Part shown: piece after piece, positions 8,737 to 33,457 of the stretch | Layout: each line of letters begins with the position of its first letter | Numbering within the stretch: the first letter of the stretch is position 1 | Virus record (IMG/VR): IMGVR_UViG_3300008448_000001 | Coordinates: 62,001 to 126,000 of that record | Strand: one strand, 5' to 3' | Length of the DNA stretch: 64,000 nt | Program-made: the position numbers and the translations under genes | Notes under the pieces: generated by a model | What the model was told of the DNA's origin: nothing | Seen by the model: only the letters and a program-made list of their open reading frames with translations | The model's database searches: none

Positions 8737-8811
8737 GGATCGGTAGCTAATTTGGTCAAAGCTATGGCGCTTCAAGTGCCAAAGACGCAGGTTCGAATCC
8801 TGCCCGATCCT
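8737..8811 (+). tRNA. Normal-length tRNA-like gene with UCA anticodon (candidate opal suppressor), element 4
   Basis: 75-nt cloverleaf: GGATCGG/CCGATCC; GCT/AGC D-stem with GG in the loop; anticodon stem TGGCG/TGCCA, loop CT-TCA-AG (anticodon 8772-8774); variable AAGAC; GCAGG-TTCGAAT-CCTGC; discriminator U. Confidence 0.75.
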
Positions 8812-14117: not shown

Positions 14118-14789
14118 ATGCTTTTAAAGCACATTGTGGTTGGCTGGCACCGGGGCGGTTTGGGTTATGCCGGCCAGTTCCTTGAAGGTTGCGGTAAGTC
14201 CGTCGGCTACACTTTCGGACCGGACTTTACCCGCAGTCAGATGGAAGAGAAGCTCGAACAAGCCAGGGAGATAGAAGTATCCCCCTGGCTTGTTCCGTAT
14301 CTGGGGCATCCGCTGCTGAAAGATGTCCCGGTGACCTTTCTGCTGCGGGACCCGATGCGTGTGTTTAACAGCTTGAAGCACTTGGGGCATTTCCAACTGA
14401 ACCACAGGACGCAGGTCGAATGGTTTGCGTTCGGTCACATGCCCGATCTGGCTACGGCGTATCGTGGAAAGCCACTACAGGCGGTTGTTGCTTATCTAAC
14501 CGGCTGGCTCAAGCTTGCCAAACAGCTCGCACCGAGCTCAAGGCTACTGCAGGTAGAGGAGTTTCCTTATTCCGCTGCGTCGCATTTTGGGTGCAATGCT
14601 CGTTTTGTCCCTTACTTGGAGCCCACGGTGAACGCGTCGGAAACCTGCCAGGTGTTCACGCCAGGTCGTTTGCCGGAAAAAGTGCGAGAACCGATGCTGC
14701 AGCTTTTAAAGAAGACGGGTTACATGTACAGTATACCGGCTCCGTACGCTGGCCATCCGCATTTCATGAACACTGACTGGCACCTTTAA
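14118..14789 (+). CDS. Sulfotransferase-like protein
   Basis: N-terminal IVVGWHRGGLGY (degenerate 5'-PSB loop) and LLRDPMRVFNS (3'-PB motif). Confidence 0.5.
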   Translation: MLLKHIVVGWHRGGLGYAGQFLEGCGKSVGYTFGPDFTRSQMEEKLEQAREIEVSPWLVPYLGHPLLKDVPVTFLLRDPMRVFNSLKHLGHFQLNHRTQVEWFAFGHMPDLATAYRGKPLQAVVAYLTGWLKLAKQLAPSSRLLQVEEFPYSAASHFGCNARFVPYLEPTVNASETCQVFTPGRLPEKVREPMLQLLKKTGYMYSIPAPYAGHPHFMNTDWHL

Positions 14790-15976
14790 TGGAAACAATT
14801 CGTGTAAGCCGCTTCATGCCGCAACGTGCCCACCGCTGGGAGCGTTCGGCGTATCTTTGGTCCGAGCAAACCAACAAATACCTCTCGGATTACCGCATTG
14901 AGGTGAATCCGAACTCCAACGCTCCTTGCGACGTTCTGCTTTTCCCGCACCCGCATTACCCGGGCAAGGAGTTTGCGGCTTATTCCTTTACGGCGCCGTT
15001 GGGTGTCGACTACCGTGGCGAGCTCGATTTCCAAACCACGCCGATGATTCTTGACAGCTCTGCGGATTACCCTTACCTGACCCCGGAGCTGCTTTCGATC
15101 CTTGCAATGCCAAACGTACGGCACTATGTCCACGGCGTAGCTTACAGGGATCCGGCGGTACACCGGCGTCGCATGATTGGCAACGAGTACCATGCTCACG
15201 TTTACCAGCAGCGTTTAGTTTACAACACTGGGCCGGACATACGACCGAACAGGCCGGAAATAGCCCCGGAGATCTGGGCTAAGGTTGCACCGCTGATTCG
15301 ACCACCGACGAGACCCTTTACTGATGAGGTGTTCGAGTACATCCAAAAGCGAAGCCGGCCTTTGAAGGAAAGAAGCTTGGACATCTCGTTCAGTGGGCGA
15401 GTGACCTACGCCAAGAGTGGGACCTATTCCGTGCCGACGATGCACCGAAGACGGCTTAAACGCATGTGGGACAGCCTTCCGGGGAAAAACAAGTTCTTCT
15501 TGAGTTATGACGACGGGCGGGGGACAACCAGCGACGGGAAACCGATTCAAACGCTTAAGTACCCATACGAATACGTCGACAAGCTGCTTGACACCAAGGT
15601 TGTAATCAGTCCTTGGGGTTTTTCGGCTTGGTGTATCCGAGACCTCGAAGCACTGGCTTGTGGGTGCCTTGTCATAAAGCCGGAGTGCAGCAGCGTTCTT
15701 TTGCAGGCGGACATTTACAATCCGGCAGCAAACCTCATGATCTGGTGCGACGTGCAGTTCAACAACCTTGCTGAACAGCTCAACTACTGCTATTCGCACC
15801 TGCCACAATTGCAGGAAAGAGCAGAAAGAGGCAAAAAATTAATCTTTGATACGTACTACCCTAACGACAAGCTGTACCGAAGCTGGACGCAAAGCATGCG
15901 ATCTTTGCTGGAAAGCGCGGTGGAGAAGCCGGCTTATTCTACGTTTGCAGGAGAATTTGAAGCGGTTTACGTTTAG
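14789..15976 (+). CDS. GT-B glycosyltransferase-like protein
   Basis: DISFSG, YVDKLLDTKVVISPWG, RDLEALACGCLVI. Confidence 0.7.
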   Translation: METIRVSRFMPQRAHRWERSAYLWSEQTNKYLSDYRIEVNPNSNAPCDVLLFPHPHYPGKEFAAYSFTAPLGVDYRGELDFQTTPMILDSSADYPYLTPELLSILAMPNVRHYVHGVAYRDPAVHRRRMIGNEYHAHVYQQRLVYNTGPDIRPNRPEIAPEIWAKVAPLIRPPTRPFTDEVFEYIQKRSRPLKERSLDISFSGRVTYAKSGTYSVPTMHRRRLKRMWDSLPGKNKFFLSYDDGRGTTSDGKPIQTLKYPYEYVDKLLDTKVVISPWGFSAWCIRDLEALACGCLVIKPECSSVLLQADIYNPAANLMIWCDVQFNNLAEQLNYCYSHLPQLQERAERGKKLIFDTYYPNDKLYRSWTQSMRSLLESAVEKPAYSTFAGEFEAVYV

Positions 15977-16049
15977 TGTATAGTTCGTCGAGCCTTTTGA
16001 TTAAAATACAGGCATCAACCTTAGCTTCGCAAAACCGGAGAGCAATGGA

Positions 16050-17375
16050 ATGCCTGCTATCTACGATGTCGAAACGCTGTGCCTTCTCTATGACAAGTAC
16101 AAAGGCAATCTTGCCGAGATAGCCCGGCACATTAACCGAAGCCGTGGTTATGTGCAAAGAGTCCTCAACCGAGGTGGACGACTGAAGAAAATGCGGGAGG
16201 CCGAGCGTCCCGTGCAGCATGCAGGTAAGAAAGGCCAAGTCGTTGTCGATAAAGCATCGGAAACTGTCGGCATTTCTTACTACGGGGAGGAGGTCAAAAC
16301 CGAAGCGGATTTGATCGCGGCAGCCAAGATCGATATCAATCTTTACGAAATCGAACGCGTTGTCGTGAACAACTGGGAAGTGGCCGGCAAGCAAAAGACA
16401 AAAGATGGCATCTGGAAGACAGGTCTTTTCCAAATTAAAATCTCTCTTCGCCGCAAGTCCGACGAACGGCTCGCCCTTGAAAAGCTGCTTGAGCAAATCA
16501 AGTCAAACAGCAAGGCAAAGACCAAACCGTATCCGAAGTACTCGCGGCCAAAGAACAAGCCACGAAGGTCCCTTGAGATTTGCATCATGGATCCGCACCT
16601 TGGGATGCAGTCCTTCAAGGGCGAGAGCGATCATAACTGGTCGATGGACGAGTGCGAGAACATGTGTCTCTGGTCGGTAGATTACCTCTTATCGCAGGCG
16701 AAGGCTTATGGACCTTTCGAAGAAATTGTTTTTCCTTTCGGCAATGACTTTATGCATCATGACAACTTGTTGCATACGACTACGAAAGGAACTCCACAGC
16801 CGGAGGGCTTGGCATATACGGCGGTTTACGAACGAGCAGTAGATCTGTCTGTGCGTATCGTCGATGTTTTGCGAGAGATTGCGCCAGTTAAAGTTCTGCA
16901 GATACCTGGTAACCATGACCAGGTATCGTCGTTTACCCTAGGTCACGTGCTGAAGGCAAGGTACCACCACGACAAGGCAGTTAGTGTGGATGCCAGCCCT
17001 TCGACCTACAAGTTCTACCACTACGGCACGAACTTGCTTGGCTTTGACCACGGCCACCACATTAAGCCTGTGCGGCTTGCTGCATTGATGGCACACGAAT
17101 GCCGCGATATCTGGGGGCAGACGACCTACCGTGAGTGGCACTTAGGTGATCAGCACCGAAAGGGATCTAGCAACCCGGTAATGCTAGAAGAGCAAGGCGT
17201 GAGCGTGGAATACATGCGGGCATTGACGCCGCCGAATGCTTGGCACCGCTTGAAAGCCTTCAACTGGCAACAGCGAGGATCGACGGGTTTCATTTGGGAT
17301 TACCACACCGGTCCGCTAGCCAGAATCTACGCCAACCTTAACAGTTACACAGGGAGACCTACCGGTGCTAAATAG
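16050..17375 (+). CDS. HTH plus calcineurin-like metallophosphoesterase
   Basis: N-terminal HTH (NLAEIARHINRSRGYV). Motifs DPHLG, GNDFMH, PGNHD, DHGH, HLGDQH. Confidence 0.85.
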   Translation: MPAIYDVETLCLLYDKYKGNLAEIARHINRSRGYVQRVLNRGGRLKKMREAERPVQHAGKKGQVVVDKASETVGISYYGEEVKTEADLIAAAKIDINLYEIERVVVNNWEVAGKQKTKDGIWKTGLFQIKISLRRKSDERLALEKLLEQIKSNSKAKTKPYPKYSRPKNKPRRSLEICIMDPHLGMQSFKGESDHNWSMDECENMCLWSVDYLLSQAKAYGPFEEIVFPFGNDFMHHDNLLHTTTKGTPQPEGLAYTAVYERAVDLSVRIVDVLREIAPVKVLQIPGNHDQVSSFTLGHVLKARYHHDKAVSVDASPSTYKFYHYGTNLLGFDHGHHIKPVRLAALMAHECRDIWGQTTYREWHLGDQHRKGSSNPVMLEEQGVSVEYMRALTPPNAWHRLKAFNWQQRGSTGFIWDYHTGPLARIYANLNSYTGRPTGAK

Positions 17376-17790
17376 CTCCAGCTTAAAAACGCTTTTATGC
17401 CTTTTCGTCATGTACTTGATTGCTTTCGGGTGCTTGTTTTGGCAACCGGCAAAAATTACCCCCGAGCCGGACGATCAGATTGCAGAGAAGGTGCCGGCGG
17501 GTGTTGTCTACGAAGGCGAGCGTTCTAGCGGTTGGTCCAAGGTACGTTCAGCCTATGTTCGGAAGCACCCGACCTGCGAAGCGTGCGGTACGCTTAAGGA
17601 TTTGAACGTGCATCACGTCAAGCCGTTTCACCTGCGACCCGAGCTGGAGTTGGATCCTGGCAACTTGATTACGCTTTGCCGAGAGCATCACTTTTACATT
17701 GGGCACCGCGGGAACTGGTCGAAAGAGAATCCCAACTGCAGGCAAGATGCTGCGAATCTTCTAAAGAGTAAGGCTCTCTCCGGTCGATAG
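17365..17790 (+). CDS. HNH endonuclease with N-terminal hydrophobic helix
   Basis: CEAC…VHHVKP…NLITLCREHH. Residues 9-26 are hydrophobic. Confidence 0.85.
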   Translation: MLNSSSLKTLLCLFVMYLIAFGCLFWQPAKITPEPDDQIAEKVPAGVVYEGERSSGWSKVRSAYVRKHPTCEACGTLKDLNVHHVKPFHLRPELELDPGNLITLCREHHFYIGHRGNWSKENPNCRQDAANLLKSKALSGR

Positions 17791-17807
17791 CGTGATGCGA
17801 GGTTGCT

Positions 17808-18518
17808 GTGGAAAAAGTAAACCGGGCTTACAACAAGGTTCGAAACGAGCTTGCGGAGTTAGGCTTACTTTACGACGGCGTTTACCTTGACAACGTTCGG
17901 CTGGTAATCACGGATCAAAAAAGCGAAGGCGAACGTGGTTTTGTTTTCGAGTCGCTAGGTTGGTACAAAGAGCTTGGCTACGAAAAGGGCGTAATCTATC
18001 TGCCCAAGGATACGCCGCACAAGCCAAACAAGGTGGCTTTCACTCTCTGCGATACGATTCGGCACGAGTACGCACATGCGTGGTACTGTTTAGATCGCGA
18101 GTTCTTCGAGCAAGCTTGGTTCGCCGACTGCTTCGGCGCCGCGTATGCTGAATCCCGTGACGTTGTCTACAAGCGTTGGCTGAAAGAACTGGATGGGAAT
18201 CCGTTGTACGCCCAGGCCAAGGCCAAGTGTCGCACCAAGCGGCAAGTACAGAAGTTGTTTCACGGCTTTCTGCTCGATGAGTTCGTCACGGACTACGCTA
18301 CCACAAACCCCGGAGAAGATTTTGCGGAGACGTTCATGTTGTATTTGCGTTACCGCAACTCTTTGAGTAGATTCTTCAAAAGGCCAGGTGTTCAACGTAA
18401 AATGCTAGGTGTACACTACGCCATTCAATCCGCAGCCGGCAGGCTAAAAAAGTTGAGCGACATACAGAAAAATGCCAAAAGAAAAAGTCCGAAAGGAGGC
18501 GAACCTTGTTCTGGTTGA
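17808..18518 (+). CDS. Zinc metallopeptidase (HExxH)
   Basis: RHEYAH plus YATTNPGEDFAETF third-ligand motif. Confidence 0.8.
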   Translation: MEKVNRAYNKVRNELAELGLLYDGVYLDNVRLVITDQKSEGERGFVFESLGWYKELGYEKGVIYLPKDTPHKPNKVAFTLCDTIRHEYAHAWYCLDREFFEQAWFADCFGAAYAESRDVVYKRWLKELDGNPLYAQAKAKCRTKRQVQKLFHGFLLDEFVTDYATTNPGEDFAETFMLYLRYRNSLSRFFKRPGVQRKMLGVHYAIQSAAGRLKKLSDIQKNAKRKSPKGGEPCSG

Positions 18519-18900
18519 TAATTGCGATTACATCGTTTCCAACCTGAACAAGCTTGCGCGGCTTAAGTTCTCCGGTGTCCGCAAGTCGCCTGTGGTGGCA
18601 CTGGAGCGACTGCTGCGAAAGCAGTGCCCTGTTTCCAGGCCGGTCTCTGTCCGGTATCGCGACCTTTCAAAAGAAGATCTCTGTGGCAGATGCCTTGTTT
18701 TTGCAGATAAAGCCGGTAAGCTCAGTCGTTTTGAGATCGAGATTGATCCGAAACTTCCGGATTTAGTCGTGATTGATAGCTTTATGCACGAGTGGGCCCA
18801 CGTCATGGATTACGATCGCAATGGTTTATCTCGAAAGAGGCATCGGCAAAGCTGGGGTGTGTGTTACGCCCAGGCGTGGAGCTCTTATGCCGACGTCTAG
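18472..18900 (+). CDS. Small SprT-like HExxH metallopeptidase
   Basis: MHEWAH…RHRQSW. Confidence 0.65.
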   Translation: MPKEKVRKEANLVLVDNCDYIVSNLNKLARLKFSGVRKSPVVALERLLRKQCPVSRPVSVRYRDLSKEDLCGRCLVFADKAGKLSRFEIEIDPKLPDLVVIDSFMHEWAHVMDYDRNGLSRKRHRQSWGVCYAQAWSSYADV

Positions 18901-18922
18901 TGAATTCAACAGGTAGCAACCA

Positions 18923-19735
18923 ATGACATTAAGCAGTCCTCTCGTTTCTTGCGTTTTGCCTTTTACAAACCCTTCAAGACTGAGTCTAGTACGCAAGGCA
19001 GTTAACAACTTCATCTTTCAACGCTACACGCCTTACGAGTTGCTTATCGTTAACGGCACGGGTCAAAGCGTTCTGACAAACTCGGACATGGATTCAGAGC
19101 CGTATGTTGCGGCGGGATGCTCGGTCAAAGAGATTCAGGCCGCCTCCGGGTTGAACGCGGCACAGATGCGAAACATCGCACTGCTAGAGCACGCCAAGGG
19201 CGATTACGTTATCTGTATCGACGATGACGACTACTTCCACCCGGACCGGCTGCTGCACCAGATGGCCCATCGCCCGCCAACAGGTACTTGTTTGCTGAAG
19301 CACCAGTTGCGAGTTGATCTGACTGGCGTTCTTTTTGCAGATAGTCAAGCTGCAGACCTTGTGACAAACAGTGCGCCGAAACTGCATCTTTTGACCAAGA
19401 ACGAAGGTATCGCGTCTACCGCCTTATTTCCGCGATTGGACTTGCTTGGAAACCCTTGGACCTTTAACGAAGATTTGACTTCTGGCGAGCATATTGAGTT
19501 GGTCAATTCAATGCGACTTAATTCAGTTGTAAGCATTTTCGACAACAGACACACGCCGTTTAATGCTGGATCCAACTTGCCCTTATTGTCGGTTGCAATG
19601 TATCACGGCGGAAACGAACTGAGCTACGCGGATTTCTTTGAGCCGACAGACGCTGAACCGTCTTCCAGCTTGAACCCGGGCGACATTGAGTTTCTGAAAA
19701 CAATTCTTCGCTCTTACAACTTTCAAGTGAACTAG
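18923..19735 (+). CDS. GT2 (GT-A) glycosyltransferase
   Basis: PLVSCVLP, ELLIVN, RNIAL…AKGDYVICIDDDDYFHPDRL. Confidence 0.9.
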   Translation: MTLSSPLVSCVLPFTNPSRLSLVRKAVNNFIFQRYTPYELLIVNGTGQSVLTNSDMDSEPYVAAGCSVKEIQAASGLNAAQMRNIALLEHAKGDYVICIDDDDYFHPDRLLHQMAHRPPTGTCLLKHQLRVDLTGVLFADSQAADLVTNSAPKLHLLTKNEGIASTALFPRLDLLGNPWTFNEDLTSGEHIELVNSMRLNSVVSIFDNRHTPFNAGSNLPLLSVAMYHGGNELSYADFFEPTDAEPSSSLNPGDIEFLKTILRSYNFQVN

Positions 19736-19737
19736 CT

Positions 19738-20490
19738 ATGGCGTGGTTCGAGTCGGTCCAACGATCTATTTTAAACGTGGTAGTGATCGGCAATGATTGC
19801 TCCGGGTCGGGGTTAATACAGCATGCTTTAGCACGACACCCGAAAGCCGTTTGCCATAGCAGCCTGTTTCACCCAAACAGAGCGGTACGGAGGGAAAGTC
19901 ACGAGCGTTATTTCGGTAGACCGGAAAGCGAAAACGTGATTGACTGGTATGAGCCGGCCTCCATCAGTGTTGAGCACTATTTGAACAACAAGATCTTTGA
20001 CAATGCCTTGCGGGAAGAGTCGGTGATAGGCGTGCGGGTACCGTGCGAGACGCTGCTTAGAAACGAGCTCGACGCTTACTTCAAGCAACGCTGTGACGAT
20101 GGCAAGCTTTCCATGATCCACGTCTACCGTAACCCAATCGCTTGCTTCATTGCTCGAGAGCAGCGTCGGCTTAAAACGACAAACGCTGTGTATGTAGCCC
20201 CGCAGGAAATCACCGATTACGTCCGAAAGCACAATGTTGCAACGCTTCGACTGCGAGATATCTTTTCCGATTACTTGGAGTTTAATTTTCACGAGGTTTT
20301 GCTCGATTACACCCAGGCCGTGAAACATGTCTGCCAATTTCTTGAGCTTCCCTTTACCCCGGACCTGGTTAACCGTGAGCTTATGGCGTATCATCGAAGC
20401 AATCGCTACAGCGTCATCAACTGGAAAGAGCTACTGACAAAGTGTGACGCTGAGGTTAGGGAGCAACTGGAGAACGCTGACTTTTTTTGA
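19738..20490 (+). CDS. Sulfotransferase-like protein (Stf0-like)
   Basis: VVIGNDCSGSGLIQHALARHP, IHVYRNP, VCQFLEL. Confidence 0.65.
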   Translation: MAWFESVQRSILNVVVIGNDCSGSGLIQHALARHPKAVCHSSLFHPNRAVRRESHERYFGRPESENVIDWYEPASISVEHYLNNKIFDNALREESVIGVRVPCETLLRNELDAYFKQRCDDGKLSMIHVYRNPIACFIAREQRRLKTTNAVYVAPQEITDYVRKHNVATLRLRDIFSDYLEFNFHEVLLDYTQAVKHVCQFLELPFTPDLVNRELMAYHRSNRYSVINWKELLTKCDAEVREQLENADFF

Positions 20491-20499
20491 AAGGCAATC

Positions 20500-21129
20500 A
20501 TGCTAGTCAACAACACGTGTAGCAAACCTTGGATGTACATGGAGGTGCCAAGGACGGCAAGCACGACGATCGAGAAATGTTTGCGTGCCGTTTATCCTGC
20601 CTCTTTCGCGCTGTACCAAAAGCACTGGCCCATAAGCACTCCGGAGGTCCGATTCGCCAACTGGCGGATTACCTCTGTTCGCAATCCTTTTAGCCGTGCG
20701 GTGAGCTGCTGGCAGTTCTTCACTGTGCCTGGCACGATCAGCTTTGAAGATTGGCTTTTGCAGGTCAAGAAAGAAGGTTTTATCGAGCACAACATCGAGG
20801 CCAGGCCGCAAGCTTTCTGGCTAAGTTTAAACAGCTGGGATTTGTGGATTCGGTTTGAGTTCTTAAAAACGGATTTAGAAGCGGTTTTCAAGATACTGGG
20901 GGCTGTGAACCAGACCGTAACGCAGGCTATCCCGCACCACAACGCGATCGGCGGCCCTTGGTTTAACCGCAGGGGCAAGTCTACGGTCGGTTTGCGATCT
21001 AAGCCGTGGCACGCCTTTTACAGCGAAAACACGATTCAGCTGGTTCGAGACGTTTACGCAGTAGACTTCGAGAAGCTGCAGAATTTTTATTCTGACAAAA
21101 TTGAGGATGCAATCCGCGATGATAGTTAA
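20500..21129 (+). CDS. Sulfotransferase family 2 protein
   Basis: EVPRTASTTI (PAPS loop), SVRNPFSRAVS, RPQ, IRFE, C-terminal YAVDF. Confidence 0.85.
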   Translation: MLVNNTCSKPWMYMEVPRTASTTIEKCLRAVYPASFALYQKHWPISTPEVRFANWRITSVRNPFSRAVSCWQFFTVPGTISFEDWLLQVKKEGFIEHNIEARPQAFWLSLNSWDLWIRFEFLKTDLEAVFKILGAVNQTVTQAIPHHNAIGGPWFNRRGKSTVGLRSKPWHAFYSENTIQLVRDVYAVDFEKLQNFYSDKIEDAIRDDS

Positions 21130-21721
21130 CAAACACGACCTCACCAGAGCTCGCTACAACCACTTGGTGGATGAGCTACCGCCGCTTTCATGGGATTACG
21201 GTATTCCCGCTGAGGCTTTAAACAGCAAGCTGTCCGAAGAAGAGATTTTCGAGCTGCTTAAGGCCGCGTATCTGGCCAAGGGAAAAAGACTTGGAGGAAA
21301 GCCGTCGGAGGACGACTACCTGGCTAACGCGAGATATGAGCTTTTTCTGCAACTGCTGGCCGCTTCAGACGCCGAGCTAGTTTACTCGCACAATCAAGTC
21401 GAAAGCCGAAAGGCCGCTGTTTGCAGCGAAGAAACAAATTGGGTGGCGGAAGTTCCAACGCCGAGTGCTGCGAGGTTGCAACTGGAAGGCGTTTACCTGG
21501 TCCATGGAAACAACTGGAATGGTTTCTGCGAACGCAAGCTAGAGGTAGCAAACGGGCCAGCGACTTTCAGCCTGCCTGCAGACTATAAGCCACAGGCCGA
21601 GGCGTCCTCGATGGACGGCAACGTATTTTTCTTGGAGGCTAGATTTAAAAACTCGACAGGAACCCGGGCTGAGTCTCTTCCAGCGAGAGCAATTCCGGAG
21701 AAATTAAAAATTGATAACTAA
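21119..21721 (+). CDS. Hypothetical protein, N-terminal domain paralogous to the next gene
   Basis: LPPLSWDYGIP…IFELLKAAYL…YSHNQ. Confidence 0.65.
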   Translation: MIVNKHDLTRARYNHLVDELPPLSWDYGIPAEALNSKLSEEEIFELLKAAYLAKGKRLGGKPSEDDYLANARYELFLQLLAASDAELVYSHNQVESRKAAVCSEETNWVAEVPTPSAARLQLEGVYLVHGNNWNGFCERKLEVANGPATFSLPADYKPQAEASSMDGNVFFLEARFKNSTGTRAESLPARAIPEKLKIDN

Positions 21722-21998
21722 CGAGCATGGCGGTTCTGCTACTAGAAGCCTGCCACCAACTGGCGGAGACTACGGCATACCGGATACGGTATACGATAAA
21801 AGCCTCACCCGTGGACAAATCTTCGATATTTTGTTGGCTAGCTACCTCTCTGACGCCAACAAGCAATGGTTGAAGGTGGGTGACGACCCTTTAGAGCAAG
21901 TTAAGTTCGAGGTCGGCATGTGCGTAACGGCGGATGTCGATGCGGGTACTATTTATTGGCACAATCAACTTGACGGGCGGGAGAAAACAAAGGCATAG
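21711..21998 (+). CDS. Hypothetical protein, paralog of the upstream N-terminal domain
   Basis: LPPTGGDYGIP…IFDILLASYL…YWHNQ. Confidence 0.65.
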   Translation: MITNEHGGSATRSLPPTGGDYGIPDTVYDKSLTRGQIFDILLASYLSDANKQWLKVGDDPLEQVKFEVGMCVTADVDAGTIYWHNQLDGREKTKA

Positions 21999-22271
21999 AT
22001 TCAGACGGATACGAAACAGGTTCTATCGACTTTTTGTGTGTTTGAGGGATATAATTTTCCCTTAGTGACTTTGCCAGGGGTGCTGGCAGGTTAGAGGCCG
22101 GTTGTTGCAAGGATTTGCGACATAAAAGCCGGCTTGGCAGCTGCCAGTAGAGAATGCAGGCAGCGGGTGGTGTCTTGGTCGCACCTTATGACCGAGACAA
22201 ATGTACGTTGAATCGTACACGGTTCCGGGGAAGGGGATCCCGGAGGGTCACTTTAACACACGAGGTCAAAC

Positions 22272-22784
22272 ATGTCAGACGAAAGCCAGTCGGCGGTTGA
22301 ACCCATTTCAGCGATTCAAAAAAAGCTTCGAACGTACCGCGCCGAAAGTGCGGTGCAGTCCGAGACAATTGACTTGCCAATGTCTGAAGTTCTTCGATTG
22401 CTGACGGACATTACGGATCACTTCAGTCGTGCCGTTCAGATTGAAAGCGACGACTATCGTGAAATCACAAAACGGCTGGCAAAGATCGAGTCTGATGTTT
22501 CCCACATTCAAAGCAATGCGGCACACATTCAAAGTGACGTCAGAACGCTTTGCAAGCTTGTGCGAGACGGTAACGGACAACCGTCCTTGCTGGAGCGTAT
22601 CTCGCATGTCGAGACAACGGTGAAAACGCACAGCCACGAGCTTTCGCAGGTTGCCAACCATGCAAACGCGATCATCGCTTCGAAGTACATGACGAAAGCA
22701 CAGATTGTTGCCGGCCTGCTCGGCATGATCGTAACGGCGTTAATCTCTGCGCTTTCTTTGGCCGCTACGTTGATGAAACCTTAA
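22272..22784 (+). CDS. Coiled-coil protein with C-terminal transmembrane helix
   Basis: Heptad pattern, GNGQPSL turn, hydrophobic C-terminus. Confidence 0.7.
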   Translation: MSDESQSAVEPISAIQKKLRTYRAESAVQSETIDLPMSEVLRLLTDITDHFSRAVQIESDDYREITKRLAKIESDVSHIQSNAAHIQSDVRTLCKLVRDGNGQPSLLERISHVETTVKTHSHELSQVANHANAIIASKYMTKAQIVAGLLGMIVTALISALSLAATLMKP

Positions 22785-22785
22785 G

Positions 22786-23343
22786 ATGCTTTCAATTACA
22801 GGTCTACCCGATGAAAAGCACTTCTTCTTGTACGAGTGCGGCCATGACGCAGAAAAGCGAGCGGCGGTAGAGCTCAACGGTTTGTTGCAGGCTGCTGGTT
22901 CGGGATATCTGCTTCTAAGCGTCCCGACAGCTATGGTGCGAGGCGTGTTTGATGCCTTGCATGAGCCGGGCATTACCTTCCCGTCGGAAGTCGACGGTCT
23001 ACGGGCAGGCATTGTTGTCATGACGCCCGATGAGCTCGAGTCGGTAGGCGGTGCGAGCAAGATATCGGAACGAGGTAAGCCCTTTCGCTATCAGCTCGGG
23101 GACTTACAAGAAATGCCAGCTAAGGGGTGGGCTGGTATTTCGGCGTGTTGGCATTTGCGTGTAAAATCTCCGGAGCTTGCGAAGCTGCGTAAGTCGTACG
23201 GCTTGCCGGAAAAGATCGAAGGTCAATCCGACTTCTCGATCGTGGTTGCCTGCCGCAAGGTGGGAGTTCTGTCGGCAAATGCAGTCAGCAAGGTAGAGCA
23301 CATTAACCCAAGTATTCTCCCTGCCTGGACAAGGCCTAACTGA
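22786..23343 (+). CDS. 2H-phosphoesterase-like protein lacking both catalytic His
   Basis: Pattern YLLLSVP…AGIVVM…W.LRVKSPELAKLRKSYGL…FSIVVA resembles phage 2H proteins, but the HxS/T motifs are replaced. Confidence 0.5.
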   Translation: MLSITGLPDEKHFFLYECGHDAEKRAAVELNGLLQAAGSGYLLLSVPTAMVRGVFDALHEPGITFPSEVDGLRAGIVVMTPDELESVGGASKISERGKPFRYQLGDLQEMPAKGWAGISACWHLRVKSPELAKLRKSYGLPEKIEGQSDFSIVVACRKVGVLSANAVSKVEHINPSILPAWTRPN

Positions 23344-23351
23344 GGTAAAAG

Positions 23352-23705
23352 ATGAGCGAAGAAGTAAACGAAGAACGTGTGGATTTGTCGACCGACTTCG
23401 GTAAAAAATTGCCTGTTTTTATCGAACTTTACACCGATGCCGACGGCACGCCCATGGTTAAGCTTAAAGCTAAAGACATGGCCGATTTTACGAACGAGAG
23501 GATAATTGACTGCTTGGCGCGCTATGATAGTGATTGTCAGGGTGAGACGCCGAAGTACCTTTACCTGTCTAAAAGCGCCGCAGATATTCTATTTTTTCGT
23601 ATGCCGGATTTTGGACCGCCGTTAGAAACCGGCATGTCAAGGTACGGTTGTGAACTCATTGTCGACACCGAAAGGGCTGATTACGCGGTGGGTTATTGCG
23701 ACTAA
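23352..23705 (+). CDS. Acidic hypothetical protein
   Basis: ORF with SD GAGG. Confidence 0.6.
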   Translation: MSEEVNEERVDLSTDFGKKLPVFIELYTDADGTPMVKLKAKDMADFTNERIIDCLARYDSDCQGETPKYLYLSKSAADILFFRMPDFGPPLETGMSRYGCELIVDTERADYAVGYCD

Positions 23706-24158
23706 ATGAGCTTTCTATCCCAGCGTCTACCTGCCGAACCGGATCTAATTGCCGACGCACTTAAGTTGGCGATGGACAGCCTTGTAAAGACTGCAAGCCA
23801 AGGCTGGTACATTGCAACCTCTGACATTGCCGGGAAGGGCGTATTTGCCGCTAAGGATTACGCCAAAGGGGACAGCATTGGACTTGCTATGACGCAGGGG
23901 GACAAAGACGAGTTTGACTCCCAGTGTTGGAACATCACTGCACTTGCACGTTATTGCAATCACCAGCAGAACAGCAACGTGGAAGTGCGAAAGGAAGGCG
24001 ACCGTTTTGATTTGGTTGCTACTCGGCCTATCGAGGAAGACGAGGAGTTGGTGTCGGATTACCGACAAGTGACAAGGGCTGTTGGCCCGAGGTCAAGAAT
24101 GCAATGGGACGGCGAAGACGTGCCCAGTACTGATTTTGAAGACTACGTTGAACGATGA
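23706..24158 (+). CDS. SET-domain protein lysine methyltransferase
   Basis: GKGVFA, ARYCNHQQNSN (RFxNH-like) and ATRPIEEDEELVSDY (ELxxDY) motifs. Confidence 0.9.
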   Translation: MSFLSQRLPAEPDLIADALKLAMDSLVKTASQGWYIATSDIAGKGVFAAKDYAKGDSIGLAMTQGDKDEFDSQCWNITALARYCNHQQNSNVEVRKEGDRFDLVATRPIEEDEELVSDYRQVTRAVGPRSRMQWDGEDVPSTDFEDYVER

Positions 24159-24730
24159 AAATCTTAGAGATAGGCCCCGGTACCGTTGATGCAAAGTCCG
24201 TTGTGTTTCCGGGAGCGGATACCCTTGATGGTGTTGTCGGCAATCCGACTTACAAAGCATCGTGGGGGAAAACGGCGTTGCCGATTGAAAGTGAAACCTA
24301 CGACAGGGTATTCGCTTCACACGTTCTTGAGCATGTTCCATGGTATCGCGTTAAATTTGCGCTGACAGAAGCCCACCGCATTTTGAAACCTGGCGGTGAA
24401 TTGGAGATCTATGTGCCTGACTTCGAAGCAATTGTTCGAAGCTATCTTGCTAAGCAGTGTGGCGACAAATGGCGTGTTTTTAACCCCGACAACGATTACA
24501 TGACGTGGGTTAACGGTAGGATTTTCACGTACGGCGAAGACGCAACCGAACTCTTGTCGGCGGTGAGGCCCATACCGCAGACGCACCACAAGACTGTTTT
24601 CGACGCTAGGTACTTGACACAGCTTGTGCGGCAGTCAAACTTCAGCAGAGTAAAGACGCTTACCGCGAGAGTTCACGGCAAAGCGCACAGTGTCCCCGAG
24701 GTCGGAGTGATCGGATACAAAGCATGCTGA
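24155..24730 (+). CDS. Class I SAM methyltransferase
   Basis: ILEIGPG, YDRVFASHVLEH, RILKPGG, VPD. Confidence 0.9.
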   Translation: MKILEIGPGTVDAKSVVFPGADTLDGVVGNPTYKASWGKTALPIESETYDRVFASHVLEHVPWYRVKFALTEAHRILKPGGELEIYVPDFEAIVRSYLAKQCGDKWRVFNPDNDYMTWVNGRIFTYGEDATELLSAVRPIPQTHHKTVFDARYLTQLVRQSNFSRVKTLTARVHGKAHSVPEVGVIGYKAC

Positions 24731-25620
24731 ACTTTGTCACTTGGAATGCGTTCTTTCAAGACGTTGTCGCTTTCGAGCGAAGTCTTCCACAGTTCGATGC
24801 CGTTTGCGGTGTACCTCGCAGCGGTTTGTTTCCTGCCACGTACATTGCGACAACGCGAAACATAAGGCTTGTTGACTATAACACGTTGTTGGAACAGCCG
24901 AGCCGGGCCATGGCTGAAGCTACGGACTCCCTCAGGCAGACAAACCCACTCGTTCGAAGCGATAAACCTGTCGGCAACCGCCTGCTTGTCATTGACGACT
25001 CTTCTTCTGCCGCCAGCGTGACAATGCGGTATACCAGAGAATTGCTGGCAGCCCAGTCGCAAGATTTGAATCTAGAAGTCACTTACGCAGCGGTTTACCG
25101 AGAATCCGAAAAAAGCAAAGTAGATTTGTGGCACAAGGAGATCGCACAACCTCGAGTATTCGAGTGGAACTGGATTCGCAACTGGCGAATGACTTCGTCG
25201 CTGTTTGACATGGACGGGGTGCTGTGCGAGGACTGGGTCGGAAACGAAGTCGTAGATGGAGTTCGTTACAAGAAGCATCTGTTGGAAGCCAAGCCTCTTT
25301 ACATTCCGCAGGTTCCGATTCATGCGATAGTAACCGGACGGCTTGAGAAGTACCGTAGCGAAACCGCAGATTGGCTCATGCGACACGGGGTAGCTTACAG
25401 GTATTTGTTCATGCACCCGGCTGCAACACCGCAGGAGCGTCAGCGTGCAGGCGATCACGCGGCACGTAAAGCGGAAGTCTATACGAACCATCCTAAAGCT
25501 ATTGTCTTCGTGGAAAGCTGCTTGAAACAGTCGCAGCAGATTGCAGAAGCAACGCAACGGCCTGTTCTGTGCACAAATGGCGGTCTTTCCAGTTTCGCAT
25601 TCTTTCGCGGCCATGCTTGA
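24724..25620 (+). CDS. Phosphoribosyltransferase-like plus HAD phosphatase fusion
   Basis: GVPRSG and LLVIDDS (PRT). FDMDGVL and IVTGR (HAD). Confidence 0.8.
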   Translation: MLNFVTWNAFFQDVVAFERSLPQFDAVCGVPRSGLFPATYIATTRNIRLVDYNTLLEQPSRAMAEATDSLRQTNPLVRSDKPVGNRLLVIDDSSSAASVTMRYTRELLAAQSQDLNLEVTYAAVYRESEKSKVDLWHKEIAQPRVFEWNWIRNWRMTSSLFDMDGVLCEDWVGNEVVDGVRYKKHLLEAKPLYIPQVPIHAIVTGRLEKYRSETADWLMRHGVAYRYLFMHPAATPQERQRAGDHAARKAEVYTNHPKAIVFVESCLKQSQQIAEATQRPVLCTNGGLSSFAFFRGHA

Positions 25621-27202
25621 GATTGAAGATGCAAGGCTGGCAACCTCGCTGCAAATAGCCAACCGCGTGAACAAAGTTGCATTGTTAAACCCGCATTTAG
25701 AGGGTTTCACGCTCACGCAACTGCTGGACAAGGTTAACCAGTGGTGCTTGGCGGAAAGGCGTAAACCTTTGTGCGTGGGTTACCGAGGTACGTTCGGTAC
25801 GTTGCTTCTGCTCTCGAAGCACTTTGCGACGTTCTTCCCTGACGTTACGCTTGTCGCCTCGGTGGAGCAAGAGACGATTGAACCGGTTGCTTATCGGCGG
25901 CTGGCGAAGGATCATCCTAACGTTTGCTTCTGCACAACGTCTGCCGACGTACGGTCGGCGGAGATTGCCACCATCTTTCGTGAGATGGATGTTTTTGTGC
26001 TTGCTCCTTATGCGGATTTCAAGCACAAGCGGTTCCGGGCGTTCTTTGAAACTATTTCGGACAGTATGCTCCTGGACGACAAGCCTTGTGCGATCGTGGA
26101 CACGGTTAACGCACGGTGGAACGACCGCCGTGGAGAGTATTACATGGGGTCGAAGGTTTGGGTAACAGCTGAGCCAGACTCTCCCGACATGCGGTTTGAA
26201 AACGGGGCGTTGCTCAACCGCAGGCAGAAGCGGCGATACGACAAGCTTTGGCGGCAGGTGCACGGTTACAGTTGGAAGTCGGAAAAGGAGGCGATTGAGT
26301 GGTTGGCTTGCGAAGTTGAGCCGACGATCAGTCTCATCAACACGGCACTCTATTACTGTTACTTGCGGTTTAAGTCGGAGACAAGGCCGGACCTTTCCAC
26401 TTCGGAAAGCTGCTTTAAATGGTGCGTGGATTGGCACAATGCGTTAAATGCGTTTTTAGGGAAATCCGCATTTACGGTCCAGGAGGCTAAGGCAAGATGG
26501 TGGCCGCACAAACACTGGTGTCGGCAGCAACCTGCGATCAAAGACCTTGTTGTCGTGACATCGTTCTCGCCGTTAGAAGGACATGCGGTCGCGCAGCGTT
26601 TTGCTTTGCAGTCTTGGCTGCGGTTAGGCCTCAAGGTAATTAGCGGTAACTCGGAAGCAGAGTGCAAGTCACTGCGAAAGCGATACCCTGACGTTGAATT
26701 CCGGGAGGTAGAATCGTCCACGGCGTTTACACGCGGTACCCCGAAGATTCGAGCCCTGATGAACCTTGGAGGAAGCTCGCCGATCCTGTTAATCAATAGC
26801 GACATCTCCATCTACGGGGATCAGTCGCTCCTTGTTGACGCGGTAGCGAAGCGGCGGGCACTGGCAGGTATCCGGTACAATTGGGAAGTTCATCCTGGGC
26901 ATGGCGAGCTTGAAGCGTGCGGCATCGATGCCTTCTTACTGTTTCCGGAACAAATAGAAACGTTTCCAGATTTAGACTTGGCCATCGGGCAACCTTTTTG
27001 GGATTACTGGTTGCCGTATCACCTGGAACAAAAAGGCTTTGCTTTCGATTGGATATCGTCGCCTTACTTTTACCACCGGCAGCATTCTGTTTACTGGGAT
27101 GCCCCGGCGTATAAGAAGGGAAATGAAATCATTTGCTCGCATTACAACTGCCACGTAGATTTTGTGGCTTGGCGGCAATCTCTTCCGTTCGTTGCCACGT
27201 AA
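25613..27202 (+). CDS. Multidomain protein: methyltransferase-like N-terminus, Erv1/ALR-like middle, GT-A-like C-terminus
   Basis: LWRQVH…W…WHNALNAFLGK (Erv/ALR-like, no CxxC). ILLINSDI…GIDAF…GQPFWDYWLP (GT-like). Confidence 0.6.
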   Translation: MLEIEDARLATSLQIANRVNKVALLNPHLEGFTLTQLLDKVNQWCLAERRKPLCVGYRGTFGTLLLLSKHFATFFPDVTLVASVEQETIEPVAYRRLAKDHPNVCFCTTSADVRSAEIATIFREMDVFVLAPYADFKHKRFRAFFETISDSMLLDDKPCAIVDTVNARWNDRRGEYYMGSKVWVTAEPDSPDMRFENGALLNRRQKRRYDKLWRQVHGYSWKSEKEAIEWLACEVEPTISLINTALYYCYLRFKSETRPDLSTSESCFKWCVDWHNALNAFLGKSAFTVQEAKARWWPHKHWCRQQPAIKDLVVVTSFSPLEGHAVAQRFALQSWLRLGLKVISGNSEAECKSLRKRYPDVEFREVESSTAFTRGTPKIRALMNLGGSSPILLINSDISIYGDQSLLVDAVAKRRALAGIRYNWEVHPGHGELEACGIDAFLLFPEQIETFPDLDLAIGQPFWDYWLPYHLEQKGFAFDWISSPYFYHRQHSVYWDAPAYKKGNEIICSHYNCHVDFVAWRQSLPFVAT

Positions 27203-32549: not shown

Positions 32550-32560
32550 GAGGTTTATCC

Positions 32561-32968: not shown

Positions 32969-32980
32969 ACGGAGTTACGT

Positions 32981-33448: not shown

Positions 33449-33457
33449 AGGAAGGCT

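What the first reader, a model, noticed from the sequence alone, without database searches (positions are those of the whole stretch)
14118..27202. Large glycan-building and sulfation toolkit
Seen: three sulfotransferase-like genes, three GT-like genes or domains, a methyltransferase and a PRT-HAD fusion lie here. Two more GTs (56042, 60810) flank a Thr/Ser-rich collagen fibre. Inference: the phage makes a sulfated, methylated glycan on its virion fibres (or on DNA or the host surface), possibly mimicking sulfated polysaccharides. Two of the sulfotransferases have degenerate PAPS loops.
Basis: partly seen in the sequence, partly recalled or inferred. Interest (0 to 1): 0.6.

Follow-up and report, generated by a model that had tools for sequence, protein, structure and literature searches.

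The report
Phage glycosyl- and sulfotransferase gene set
An uncultured 205-kb phage carries a conserved set of sugar-adding enzymes and three sulfotransferase-fold proteins (one canonical, one variant, one missing its cofactor contacts) that probably build a sulfated glycan; no phage has been shown to do this, and the target is unproven.

Summary
The enzymes are real, but the "13-kb toolkit" is overstated. Window 14118-27202 holds 18 ORFs. Seven or eight bear on glycans: two tight gene pairs (ST-A + GT-B-like; GT2 + ST-B + ST-C), a class I methyltransferase and an unverified GT-like C-domain. The rest are an SbcD-like nuclease, an HNH, two HExxH proteins, a 2H phosphoesterase, a SET protein and unknowns.

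All three sulfotransferase folds hold up. ST-C has canonical PAPS motifs. ST-A founds a Pfam-less family with an invariant variant loop. ST-B sits in a sub-clade that lost both PAPS contacts, inside a large, mostly canonical family.

Bacterial relatives of ST-B are fused to GT2 or GT31 domains, one of them in an ABC-transporter glycan cluster. That ties the GT2/ST-B pair to carbohydrate.

The PRT-HAD fusion resembles a purine PRT joined to a T4-PNKP-type phosphatase, not the glycan ribofuranosyltransferases, so it probably belongs to nucleotide or nucleic-acid metabolism.

ThyA is a true thymidylate synthase, which argues against hydroxymethyl-pyrimidine DNA glycosylation.

A second, structural-module cluster (GT2-MT, GXT-collagen fibre, GT1) is syntenic in a distant relative and is the best candidate acceptor. 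The link between the two clusters is inferred only. The phage encodes no PAPS synthesis.

The parts
14118..14789 (+). ST-A: 223-aa sulfotransferase-fold protein of a Pfam-less, lineage-specific family. It starts 8 nt after thyA and overlaps the next gene by 1 nt.
   Evidence: No family hit. AF2 model pLDDT 84. Foldseek top hits are sulfotransferases at E 4e-4. VIA gives Z 12.5, 11.9 and 11.9 to TPSTs, and the top 16 rows are all sulfotransferases. The family has 84 clusters, none with a Pfam domain, several on ~200-kb contigs. The G-W-x-R-G-G-L-G-Y loop, the R-D-P...N-S motif and E53 are invariant.
14789..15976 (+). GT-B-like (CgeB / Glyco_trans_1_2-type) putative glycosyltransferase, 395 aa, coupled to ST-A.
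   Evidence: PF13524 at 25.3 bits against a cut-off of 25, residues 283-356. Protein-atlas neighbours score 0.95-0.97 and carry PF13524 or RXYLT1_C. Orthologues are 48-78% identical and always lie next to ST-A. No PDB sequence hit.
18923..19735 (+). GT2 (GT-A fold) glycosyltransferase, 270 aa, ending 2 nt before ST-B.
   Evidence: PF00535 at 30.8 bits. Weak NCBIfam hits to WcaA, TuaG, EpsD and HpsN. Invariant DDDD-Y-x-H motif. No TM segment.
19738..20490 (+). ST-B: Sulfotransfer_3-family protein, 250 aa, that has lost both PAPS-phosphate contacts. It is the most widely kept gene of the set.
   Evidence: PF13469 at 34.6 bits. The PDB profile hits only sulfotransferases (TPST1/2, SULT1C3, NodH) at E ~0.01. 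The family has 318 representatives at E<=1e-10. Of 137 members scored, 95 have both the loop K/R and the +8 S/T, and 32 have neither, including the window and all close kin.
20500..21129 (+). ST-C: Sulfotransfer_2-family protein, 209 aa, with canonical PAPS motifs.
   Evidence: PF03567 at 25.1 bits against a cut-off of 22. phrog_3347 'galactose-3-O-sulfotransferase' at E 1e-4. The P-R-T-x-S-T-T loop and the R-N-P...S motif are conserved. PDB profile top hits are SULT4A1 and HS 3-OST, both weak. It co-occurs with ST-A in relatives.
24155..24730 (+). Class I SAM methyltransferase, 191 aa. Accessory: found only in some relatives and always next to the PRT-HAD gene. Substrate unknown.
   Evidence: PF08241, PF13489 and PF13649 hits. 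Orthologues in L008 and L020.
24724..25620 (+). PRT-HAD fusion, 298 aa: a purine-PRT-like N-domain with an intact DD motif, and a capless PNKP-type HAD phosphatase C-domain with a D-x-D-G-V motif. Probably not a glycan enzyme.
   Evidence: NCBIfam xanthine PRT at E 2e-6. PDB profile hits GpT-2 at E 1.4e-3 and Pnkp1 at E 0.23. VIA places the HAD domain at Z 11.7, 11.4 and 10.7 to Pnkp1 and T4 PNKP, and the PRT domain at Z 10.0-8.8 to purine PRTs. The ribofuranosyltransferases 7SHG (Z 8.0) and 8A0C (Z 7.6) sit in the general HAD background.
25613..27202 (+). Composite ORF; the likely start is 25613, and the longest ORF runs from 25541. The N-domain is conserved as a separate ~180-aa gene in distant relatives. 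A window-specific Erv1/ALR-like insert lies at about 26261-26560. The C-domain (26528-27199) belongs to a ~220-aa phage protein family that is possibly GT-A-like, which is unverified.
   Evidence: Alignment A5. Erv1/ALR at 24.2 bits, below the 27.6 cut-off. Protein-atlas leads for the C-domain. No PDB or hhalign support.
56042..57271 (+). GT2 with a methyltransferase-like C-terminal part, directly upstream of the collagen fibre gene.
   Evidence: PF00535 at 26.7 bits. phrog_6636 methyltransferase at E 6e-4. The orthologue is 65% identical and sits in the same place in G001.
57286..58824 (+). Collagen-like tail fibre, 512 aa, with G-X-T repeats. This is the candidate glycan acceptor.
   Evidence: PF01391 at 104 bits and tail-fibre PHROGs. 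Composition is Gly 21%, Thr 16%, Ser 7%. Relatives carry 847- to 3030-aa versions.
60810..61898 (+). GT1/GT4-type glycosyltransferase, 362 aa.
   Evidence: PF00534 at 61 bits. phrog_3408 at E 1e-195. It is 73% identical to the Synechococcus phage S-CAM7 GT. It is 75% identical to the G001 orthologue, which is fused there to a methyltransferase.

Best explanation
The region holds two small, tightly coupled modules of soluble cytoplasmic enzymes: ST-A with a GT-B-like transferase, and GT2 with ST-B and ST-C. They lie among unrelated replication and nucleotide genes of an uncultured ~205-kb phage that has its own multisubunit RNA polymerase.

Proposed mechanism (inferred):
- During infection the GTs use host nucleotide-sugars to build a short glycan. 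Relatives encode their own NDP-6-deoxyhexose genes.
- ST-C, and probably ST-A, use host PAPS to add sulfate.
- ST-B keeps the fold and many invariant residues but has lost both PAPS-phosphate contacts. It would act as a non-catalytic or re-purposed partner.
- The most likely acceptor is a phage structural protein assembled in the cytoplasm. The best candidate is the G-X-T collagen-like fibre, which has its own flanking GT2-MT and GT1.

Shown: the folds, the motifs, the gene coupling, the conservation and the GT-ST fusions in bacteria. Inferred: the sulfate donor, the activities, the order of steps and the acceptor. The PRT-HAD fusion, the SET protein, the 2H phosphoesterase and the nuclease genes are not part of this pathway.
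For: - Sulfotransferase fold of all three proteins.
- Canonical PAPS motifs in ST-C. Invariant Arg loop and RDP...S motif in 82 ST-A family members.
- GT2 has an invariant DXD-type motif.
- Gene coupling: -1, 2 and 9 nt between the partners.
- Synteny across more than ten contigs at 31-78% identity.
- Relatives place RmlC-like, 4,6-dehydratase/epimerase and NTP-transferase genes beside ST-A and the GT-B-like gene.
- Bacterial members of the ST-B family are fused to GT2 (P0130, P0163) or Galactosyl_T (P0162). P0130 lies in a Wzm/Wzt cluster with GT4s and a UDP-GlcNAc 2-epimerase-family gene.
- None of the ST or GT proteins has a TM segment.
- The GT2-MT, collagen fibre and GT1 arrangement is conserved inside the structural module of G001.
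- Precedents: O-glycosylated G-X-T collagen region of BclA and virus-encoded glycosylation of collagen-like proteins (PMC9614988). Virion glycosylation in mycobacteriophages (Freeman 2023, cited in PMC12619734). Predicted sulfation of collagen-like and tail-collar proteins (PMC2938197).
Against: - No activity, donor or acceptor has been measured.
- The phage has no APS kinase. This genome also lacks the NDP-sugar genes that its relatives carry.
- ST-B, the most conserved member, lacks both PAPS contacts.
- The 14-27 kb genes sit in the replication/nucleotide block, about 30 kb from the fibre.
- G005 keeps ST-B and GT2 but has no collagen gene. G002 and G004 have collagen but no ST-A or ST-C. 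These are incomplete contigs.
- The GT-B-like Pfam hit is borderline.
- The complex prediction for GT2 + ST-B gave no answer.
Confidence: 0.45

Rival explanations
1. The enzymes remodel a host envelope glycan rather than the virion. They would act on lipid-linked LPS, capsule or EPS intermediates at the inner face of the membrane, and the host would export the product. The effect could be superinfection exclusion or altered cell-surface properties.
For: The nearest cellular relatives of ST-B are GT2-ST fusions inside an ABC-transporter (Wzm/Wzt) polysaccharide cluster. The weak named hits of GT2 are exopolysaccharide GTs: WcaA, TuaG, EpsD and HpsN. The genes lie in the non-structural part of the genome. 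PHROGs files the ST-C-like and GT1 families under 'moron, auxiliary metabolic gene and host takeover'.
Against: The region shows no flippase, polymerase, ABC transporter or Gtr-type membrane partner, and all the proteins are soluble. The set is conserved across relatives whose GC ranges from 42 to 62%, hence probably different hosts with different surface glycans. No lysogeny module was seen in the window; the lifestyle was not tested.
Confidence: 0.25
2. There is no single pathway. The span is a mosaic of independently acquired accessory genes. Some of the sulfotransferase-fold proteins, certainly ST-B and possibly ST-A, are not sulfotransferases at all but P-loop-derived binding proteins or enzymes with another donor.
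For: ST-B lost both PAPS contacts but stays conserved. Content varies between relatives: ST-A, ST-C, the GT-B-like gene, GT2 and the methyltransferase come and go. Unrelated genes are interleaved. The PRT-HAD fusion points to nucleotide or nucleic-acid chemistry.
Against: The pairs are tightly coupled and stay paired in relatives. ST-A and ST-C co-occur. GT-ST fusions in bacteria show a functional link.
Confidence: 0.2
3. The enzymes hypermodify phage DNA or nucleotides with glycosylated, perhaps sulfated or methylated, bases to evade restriction.
For: The genes lie between thyA and the class II RNR, next to an SbcD-like nuclease and a PRT-HAD fusion. Virus GTs are known to decorate DNA with diverse glycans (Pyle 2024, cited in PMC12619734).
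Against: ThyA passes the thymidylate synthase equivalog cut-off (370 bits against 327) and is the only family member in the genome, so no hydroxymethyl-pyrimidine acceptor is apparent. ST-B relatives are fused to polysaccharide GTs. I know of no sulfated DNA base.
Confidence: 0.07

Closest known systems
Bacterial GT2-sulfotransferase fusion proteins in ABC-transporter-dependent glycan clusters (P0130, P0163; also the Galactosyl_T-ST fusion P0162)
   Same: They share the ST family with ST-B (E 8e-27 to 8.7e-18 with the ST-B profile) and show the same GT2-next-to-ST logic.
   Different: The bacterial proteins are fused, keep the canonical Arg and Ser PAPS contacts, and sit beside Wzm/Wzt exporters. 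The phage genes are separate, ST-B has lost both contacts, and no exporter is present.
Virion glycosylation in mycobacteriophages (Freeman et al. 2023, cited in PMC12619734)
   Same: Phage-encoded soluble GTs presumed to decorate structural proteins in the cytoplasm. The GT2-MT and GT1 genes here flank a structural gene.
   Different: No sulfotransferases are reported there. The 14-27 kb genes here are far from the structural genes. Nothing has been measured here.
BclA-type G-X-T collagen glycoproteins of Bacillus exosporium, and Mimivirus L230 acting on the collagen-like protein L71 (PMC9614988)
   Same: A Thr-rich collagen repeat as O-glycan carrier, 6-deoxyhexose (Rml-type) genes in the neighbourhood in relatives, and a virus-encoded enzyme acting on a viral collagen-like protein.
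   Different: No homology between these GTs and the BclA or L230 enzymes was tested. L230 works through hydroxylysine, and no hydroxylase was found here. No sulfate is known in those systems: the giant-virus glycan review does not mention sulfation.
Predicted sulfation of bacterial collagen-like and tail-collar proteins by sulfotransferases linked to 2OG-Fe dioxygenases (Iyer et al. 2010, PMC2938197)
   Same: Sulfotransferases are genomically associated with collagen-like or phage-tail-like proteins, and a protein or surface substrate is proposed.
   Different: Those operons also encode dioxygenases and PAPS synthetases. Neither was found here. That prediction is itself untested.
Bipartite ribofuranosyltransferases (gPRT + HAD phosphoribose phosphatase; T. 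composti 7SHG, Bcs3 CriT/CrpP, Cj1432; PMC11127046, PMC10299916, PMC12096443)
   Same: A PRT-fold domain is fused to a HAD phosphatase, an architecture that could transfer ribose-5-P from PRPP and then remove the phosphate.
   Different: The domain order is reversed. The PRT domain is a compact purine-PRT type with a vicinal DD motif. The HAD domain is closest to the T4 PNKP and Pnkp1 3'-phosphatases (Z 11.7-10.7), while 7SHG (Z 8.0) and 8A0C (Z 7.6) lie in the HAD background.

Membership tests
PAPS-dependent sulfotransferases (Pfam Sulfotransfer_1/2/3 clan) | Sulfotransferase alpha/beta fold | tested here: met
   ST-B hits PF13469 and ST-C hits PF03567, both above their cut-offs. The ST-A model matches sulfotransferases first with Foldseek and with VIA, Z up to 12.5.
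PAPS-dependent sulfotransferases (Pfam Sulfotransfer_1/2/3 clan) | 5'-PSB loop with a basic residue followed by Ser/Thr (P-K/R-S/T-G-T-T type) | tested here: inconclusive
   ST-C meets it (P-R-T-x-S-T-T). ST-A keeps an invariant Arg, but Gly-Gly-Leu-Gly replaces the Ser/Thr residues. ST-B does not meet it, with Cys or His in place of Arg.
PAPS-dependent sulfotransferases (Pfam Sulfotransfer_1/2/3 clan) | 3'-PB motif: Arg, then Ser eight residues later | tested here: inconclusive
   ST-A (R77...S85, invariant in 82 sequences) and ST-C (R61...S69) meet it. ST-B keeps the Arg but has Ala at +8. In the wider family, 95 of 137 scored members have both the loop K/R and the +8 Ser/Thr.
PAPS-dependent sulfotransferases (Pfam Sulfotransfer_1/2/3 clan) | PAPS binding and sulfuryl transfer | not testable with these tools
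   This needs protein biochemistry. The phage encodes no APS kinase.
GT2 (GT-A fold) glycosyltransferases | Pfam GT2 domain above its cut-off, with a DXD metal/donor motif | tested here: met
   PF00535 at 30.8 bits for 18923-19735 and 26.7 bits for 56042-57271. The DDDD motif is invariant in six orthologues.
GT-B glycosyltransferases (Glyco_trans_1_2 / CgeB-like) | C-terminal Rossmann half with the family signature, at family-level score | tested here: inconclusive
   PF13524 at 25.3 bits against a cut-off of 25. Protein-atlas neighbours carry PF13524 or RXYLT1_C at 0.95-0.97. No PDB sequence hit. No structure model was made.
Bipartite glycan ribofuranosyltransferases (gPRT + PRP) | HAD domain of the PRP type and PRT domain of the gPRT/CriT type | tested here: not met
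   The HAD domain is closest to PNKP-type phosphatases (Z 11.7). 7SHG scores Z 8.0 and 8A0C scores Z 7.6, within the background. The PRT domain is closest to purine PRTs (NCBIfam XPRT at E 2e-6). The model pLDDT is only 67.6.
Phage DNA glycosylation systems acting on hydroxymethyl-pyrimidines | A dCMP or dUMP hydroxymethylase (ThyA paralogue) supplying the acceptor base | tested here: not met
   The only ThyA-family gene passes the thymidylate synthase equivalog cut-off (370 bits against 327).
Phage virion glycosylation cassettes (GTs beside structural genes) | GT genes embedded in the structural module, next to the acceptor gene | tested here: inconclusive
   Met for 56042 and 60810, which flank the fibre and are syntenic in G001. 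Not met for the 14-27 kb genes, which lie between thyA and the RNR.

The most novel reading that the evidence does not exclude
This uncultured jumbo-phage lineage makes a virus-encoded sulfated, probably methylated, glycan on its virion fibre. I know of no demonstrated case in any phage. It would do so with a new Pfam-less sulfotransferase family (ST-A) and a retained pseudo-sulfotransferase (ST-B). ST-B lost both PAPS contacts and would now serve as a scaffold or acceptor-binding partner of GT2.
Probability: 0.2. Interest if true: 0.75.

Novelty: new variant of a known kind. Interest (0 to 1): 0.5.

Why it matters
Virus-encoded glycosylation is established for chloroviruses, mimiviruses and some mycobacteriophages. 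Sulfation by a phage has not been demonstrated as far as I know, and the giant-virus glycan review does not mention it. A sulfated coat would change virion charge, adsorption, stickiness to host or environmental polysaccharides, and recognition by grazers or immune systems.

Two results stand on their own. ST-A defines an unannotated sulfotransferase-fold family with an unusual, rigidly conserved Gly-rich loop. ST-B offers a clean natural example of coupled loss of both cofactor contacts in a protein that remains conserved.

The work also corrects one part of the finding: the PRT-HAD fusion is most likely nucleotide or nucleic-acid chemistry, not glycan chemistry.

Tried and rejected
- Megablast of the region, and tblastn of ST-B, the GT-B-like protein and PRT-HAD, against 50,697 phage records: no match. 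No isolate relative exists in that collection.
- psbA search as a test for a cyanophage: none found. The host remains unknown.
- APS kinase search: only a 16-bit P-loop match.
- PDB sequence-profile searches for ST-A, the GT-B-like protein and the u553 C-domain: nothing usable.
- hhalign of ST-A against ST-B, and of the u553 C-domain against GT2: not significant.
- Idea that PRT-HAD is a glycan ribofuranosyltransferase: rejected on structural proximity.
- Idea that ST-B lost its motifs because ST-C took over: rejected. Relatives without ST-C have the same degenerate ST-B.
- Complex prediction for GT2 + ST-B: no answer, score 0.00. This is not evidence either way.
- Scan of genome contigs with the ST-B profile: a single hit, a phage-like contig binned into a Nanopelagicales MAG.
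- The 'moraphage' lineage paper (PMC12619734) is not this lineage; those phages lack RNA polymerase genes.

Full report
**Context.** The window is bases 62001-126000 of a 204,794-bp virus record with direct terminal repeats, judged complete. GC content is 52%. All convincing genes in the window lie on the + strand. The phage has no close relative among 50,697 deposited phage genomes. It belongs to an uncultured lineage of about 157-214-kb contigs from metagenomes. It encodes a fused beta/beta' multisubunit RNA polymerase. The host is unknown. No psbA was found. One late GT is 73% identical to a Synechococcus phage gene. One related contig was binned into a Nanopelagicales MAG.

**What is in 14118-27202.** The span holds eighteen ORFs, tightly packed with gaps from -80 to 73 nt and one gap of 273 nt. 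In order they are:
- ST-A (14118-14789)
- a GT-B-like protein (14789-15976)
- an SbcD/Mre11-like exonuclease with an N-terminal HTH (16050-17375; phrog_704, E 5e-65)
- an HNH endonuclease
- two small HExxH proteins
- GT2 (18923-19735)
- ST-B (19738-20490)
- ST-C (20500-21129)
- two paralogous unknowns
- a tail-anchored coiled-coil protein
- a 2H phosphoesterase
- an unknown
- a SET-domain protein
- a class I methyltransferase (24155-24730)
- the PRT-HAD fusion (24724-25620)
- a composite 553-aa ORF

A true thymidylate synthase lies just upstream and a class II RNR just downstream. Only seven or eight of the eighteen ORFs plausibly bear on glycans. The span is not one contiguous operon of glycan genes.

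**The three sulfotransferase folds.** ST-B and ST-C pass their Pfam cut-offs. Their ortholog profiles hit only sulfotransferases in the PDB, weakly.

ST-A has no family or PDB sequence match. Its AF2 model (pLDDT 84, pTM 0.85) matches sulfotransferases first with two independent aligners:
- Foldseek: HS 3-OST, a bacterial sulfotransferase and TPST at E 4e-4 to 1e-2.
- VIA: TPST1 at Z 12.5 (185 residues, rmsd 3.6 Å). The top 16 rows are all sulfotransferases. P-loop kinases reach only Z <= 8.4 and cover only the first 159 residues.

The motifs differ between the three proteins:
- ST-C has the canonical loop (Pro-Arg-Thr-x-Ser-Thr-Thr) and Arg...Ser pair.
- The ST-A family has 84 clusters, all about 223 aa, none with a Pfam domain, several on ~200-kb contigs. 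It has an invariant Gly-Trp-x-Arg-Gly-Gly-Leu-Gly-Tyr loop, an invariant Arg-Asp-Pro...Asn-Ser motif and an invariant Glu53. This is an unusual site, but it is not decayed.
- ST-B is different. An exhaustive HMMER search found 318 representatives at E <= 1e-10. Of 137 aligned members, 95 carry both the loop Lys/Arg and the Ser/Thr eight residues after the conserved Arg. Thirty-two carry neither and only ten carry one.

The window's ST-B and all its close kin (L001-L011) are in the 'neither' group. More distant phage relatives (L013, L014, L020, L025) are canonical. These counts are not phylogenetically independent. The pattern is a coupled loss of both PAPS-phosphate contacts in one sub-lineage. 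Within that sub-lineage many other residues remain invariant. The loss does not depend on the presence of ST-C.

**The glycosyltransferases.** GT2 (270 aa) passes Pfam and has an invariant DDDD motif. Its weak named relatives are exopolysaccharide GTs. The GT-B-like protein is borderline in Pfam (25.3 bits against 25). Its protein-atlas neighbours carry Glyco_trans_1_2 or RXYLT1_C.

The third 'GT-like domain' is presumably the C-domain of the 553-aa ORF. It belongs to a ~220-aa phage protein family whose nearest named atlas clusters are GT2 and DUF707 at 0.92. It has no Pfam, PDB or profile support, so I leave it unverified.

Genome-wide there are three GT2 matches, one GT1 and one TOD1/MUCI70-like GT. 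The last of these, with the third GT2, lies outside the window at genome 32.3-33.8 kb. None of the ST or GT proteins has a TM segment.

**Why these genes belong together, and to carbohydrate.**
- ST-A overlaps the GT-B-like gene by one base. GT2 ends two bases before ST-B, and ST-C follows ST-B after nine bases.
- The pairs persist in relatives down to 31-40% identity.
- ST-A, the GT-B-like gene and ST-C co-vary in presence. ST-B is the most widely kept.
- Relatives insert RmlC-like, 4,6-dehydratase/epimerase and RmlA-like nucleotidyltransferase genes next to ST-A and the GT-B-like gene. This genome lacks them.
- Cellular members of the ST-B family are domain fusions with GTs. P0130 is GT2 + ST, P0163 is GT2 + ST + ST, and P0162 is Galactosyl_T + ST. 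P0130 lies beside a Wzm/Wzt-type ABC transporter, GT4 genes, a UDP-GlcNAc 2-epimerase-family gene and a Glyco_trans_1_2 gene. This Rosetta-stone evidence ties the GT2/ST-B pair to glycan assembly.

**The PRT-HAD fusion.** The architecture is real. The N-domain has a PRT fold and an Asp-Asp motif. Supporting hits are NCBIfam xanthine PRT at E 2e-6 and a PDB profile hit to a purine PRT at E 1.4e-3. VIA gives Z 10.0-8.8 to purine PRTs. The C-domain is a HAD with an Asp-x-Asp-Gly-Val motif.

I tested the attractive idea that it is a glycan ribofuranosyltransferase of the gPRT + phosphoribose-phosphatase kind (PMC11127046, PMC10299916, PMC12096443). The HAD domain is closest to the capless 3'-phosphatases of Pnkp1 and T4 PNKP (Z 11.7, 11.4, 10.7). 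The ribofuranosyltransferases 7SHG and 8A0C score Z 8.0 and 7.6, inside the generic HAD background. The domain order is also reversed. The model is only moderate (pLDDT 67.6). The gene sits next to a 2H phosphoesterase block and the RNR. I therefore read it as nucleotide or nucleic-acid chemistry, not as part of the glycan set.

**The second cluster.** The GT2 at 56042 has a methyltransferase-like tail. It directly precedes a 512-aa collagen-like tail fibre with G-X-T repeats (Gly 21%, Thr 16%). A GT1 follows at 60810.

Relative G001 has an ST-B only 37% identical to the window's. Even so, the same order holds: the GT2 orthologue is 65% identical, the collagen ORF is 3030 aa, and the GT1 orthologue is 75% identical and fused to a methyltransferase. 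All of this lies right after a 91%-identical 320-aa protein that is presumably structural.

This is the best candidate acceptor. It has the BclA exosporium glycoprotein, the Mimivirus collagen-like protein modified by L230, and mycobacteriophage virion glycans as precedents (PMC9614988; Freeman 2023 as cited in PMC12619734). Iyer et al. predicted sulfation of collagen-like and tail-collar proteins in bacteria (PMC2938197).

The link from the 14-27 kb genes to the fibre is inference only. G005 keeps ST-B and GT2 but shows no collagen. G002 and G004 have collagen but neither ST-A nor ST-C. These three contigs are incomplete.

**Rivals.**
- Host-envelope remodelling is the main alternative. Cellular relatives of ST-B work in exported polysaccharide pathways. 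Against it, no membrane partner or exporter is seen and all the proteins are soluble.
- A 'no common pathway' reading is supported by the mosaic content and the dead-looking ST-B.
- DNA hypermodification is disfavoured. The only ThyA-family gene is an equivalog-level thymidylate synthase.

**Limits.** The complex prediction for GT2 + ST-B gave no answer. Structure jobs were capped at two, so the GT-B-like protein, ST-B and the u553 C-domain were not modelled. PAPS must come from the host, since the phage has no APS kinase.

**Verdict.** It is too generous on the extent of the toolkit, on the third GT and on the PRT-HAD fusion. The interpretation, a sulfated and methylated glycan on virion fibres, is a reasonable leading hypothesis without direct support. 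The solid new points are three:
- a Pfam-less sulfotransferase-fold family (ST-A);
- a conserved ST-B sub-clade with coupled loss of both PAPS contacts;
- GT-ST fusions in bacteria that link the phage gene pair to carbohydrate.

Noticed in passing
window 8737-8811 (+): A 75-nt tRNA with anticodon TCA, called tRNA-SeC by ARAGORN but too short for a selenocysteine tRNA. It looks like a UGA-reading suppressor. TGA still ends 13 of 61 window ORFs (TAA 27, TAG 21), so there is no sign of general TGA recoding.
   Followed up: partly
window 34725-39164 and 40843-42807 (+): A multisubunit RNA polymerase with beta and the N-terminal part of beta' fused in one 1479-aa ORF, plus a separate beta' C-terminal part. 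The nearest deposited relatives are only ~30% identical: Salmonella phage Arash and Vibrio phages D69, D181 and D148.
   Followed up: partly
window 23706-24158 (+) and 22786-23343 (+): A SET-domain protein (PF00856, 39 bits), i.e. a putative protein lysine methyltransferase, and a 2H 'Swiss Army Knife' phosphoesterase are conserved side by side across the whole lineage, more widely than most glycan genes. Their function is unknown.
   Followed up: no
window ~26261-26560 (+), inside ORF 25541-27202: A window-specific insert resembling Erv1/ALR sulfhydryl oxidases (24.2 bits, below the 27.6 cut-off). It has the Trp-His-Asn...Leu-Gly-Lys signature, but the upstream CxxC appears replaced. The insert is absent from the 441-aa orthologue in L001.
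   Followed up: partly
window 17808-18518 and 18472-18900 (+): Two small HExxH proteins, one matching Peptidase_Mx at 28.9 bits, lie between the SbcD-like nuclease and GT2. The second is kept in nearly all relatives directly upstream of GT2 or ST-B.
   Followed up: no
window 60810-61898 (+): The GT1 gene is 71-73% identical at protein level to a GT of marine Synechococcus myoviruses S-CAM7 and ACG-2014f, and 75% identical to the orthologue in a distant lineage member. It is far more conserved than the surrounding genes. This could be a host clue or recent transfer.
   Followed up: partly
L020 (JBDNFH010000146.1, 'Candidatus Nanopelagicales' MAG contig, 49,996 bp): The only hit for the ST-B profile in 185,579 species genomes is a contig with the phage's gene order: ST-C, GT2, ST-B, GT2, 2H, MT, PRT-HAD. 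It is either a mis-binned phage contig or a host hint.
   Followed up: partly
genome G000:C1 ~32304-33798 (outside the window): Another GT pair: a GT2 (24.1 bits) followed by a TOD1/MUCI70-type GT-like protein (69.6 bits). This brings the genome to at least six GT-like genes.
   Followed up: partly
window 21101-21721 and 21711-21998 (+): Two adjacent ORFs share a ~90-aa N-terminal domain (33% identity), a local duplication. Relatives have one shorter copy.
   Followed up: no
window 17365-17790 (+): An HNH endonuclease with a hydrophobic N-terminal helix overlaps the end of the SbcD-like gene. It is present in only some relatives and so is probably a mobile insertion.
   Followed up: no
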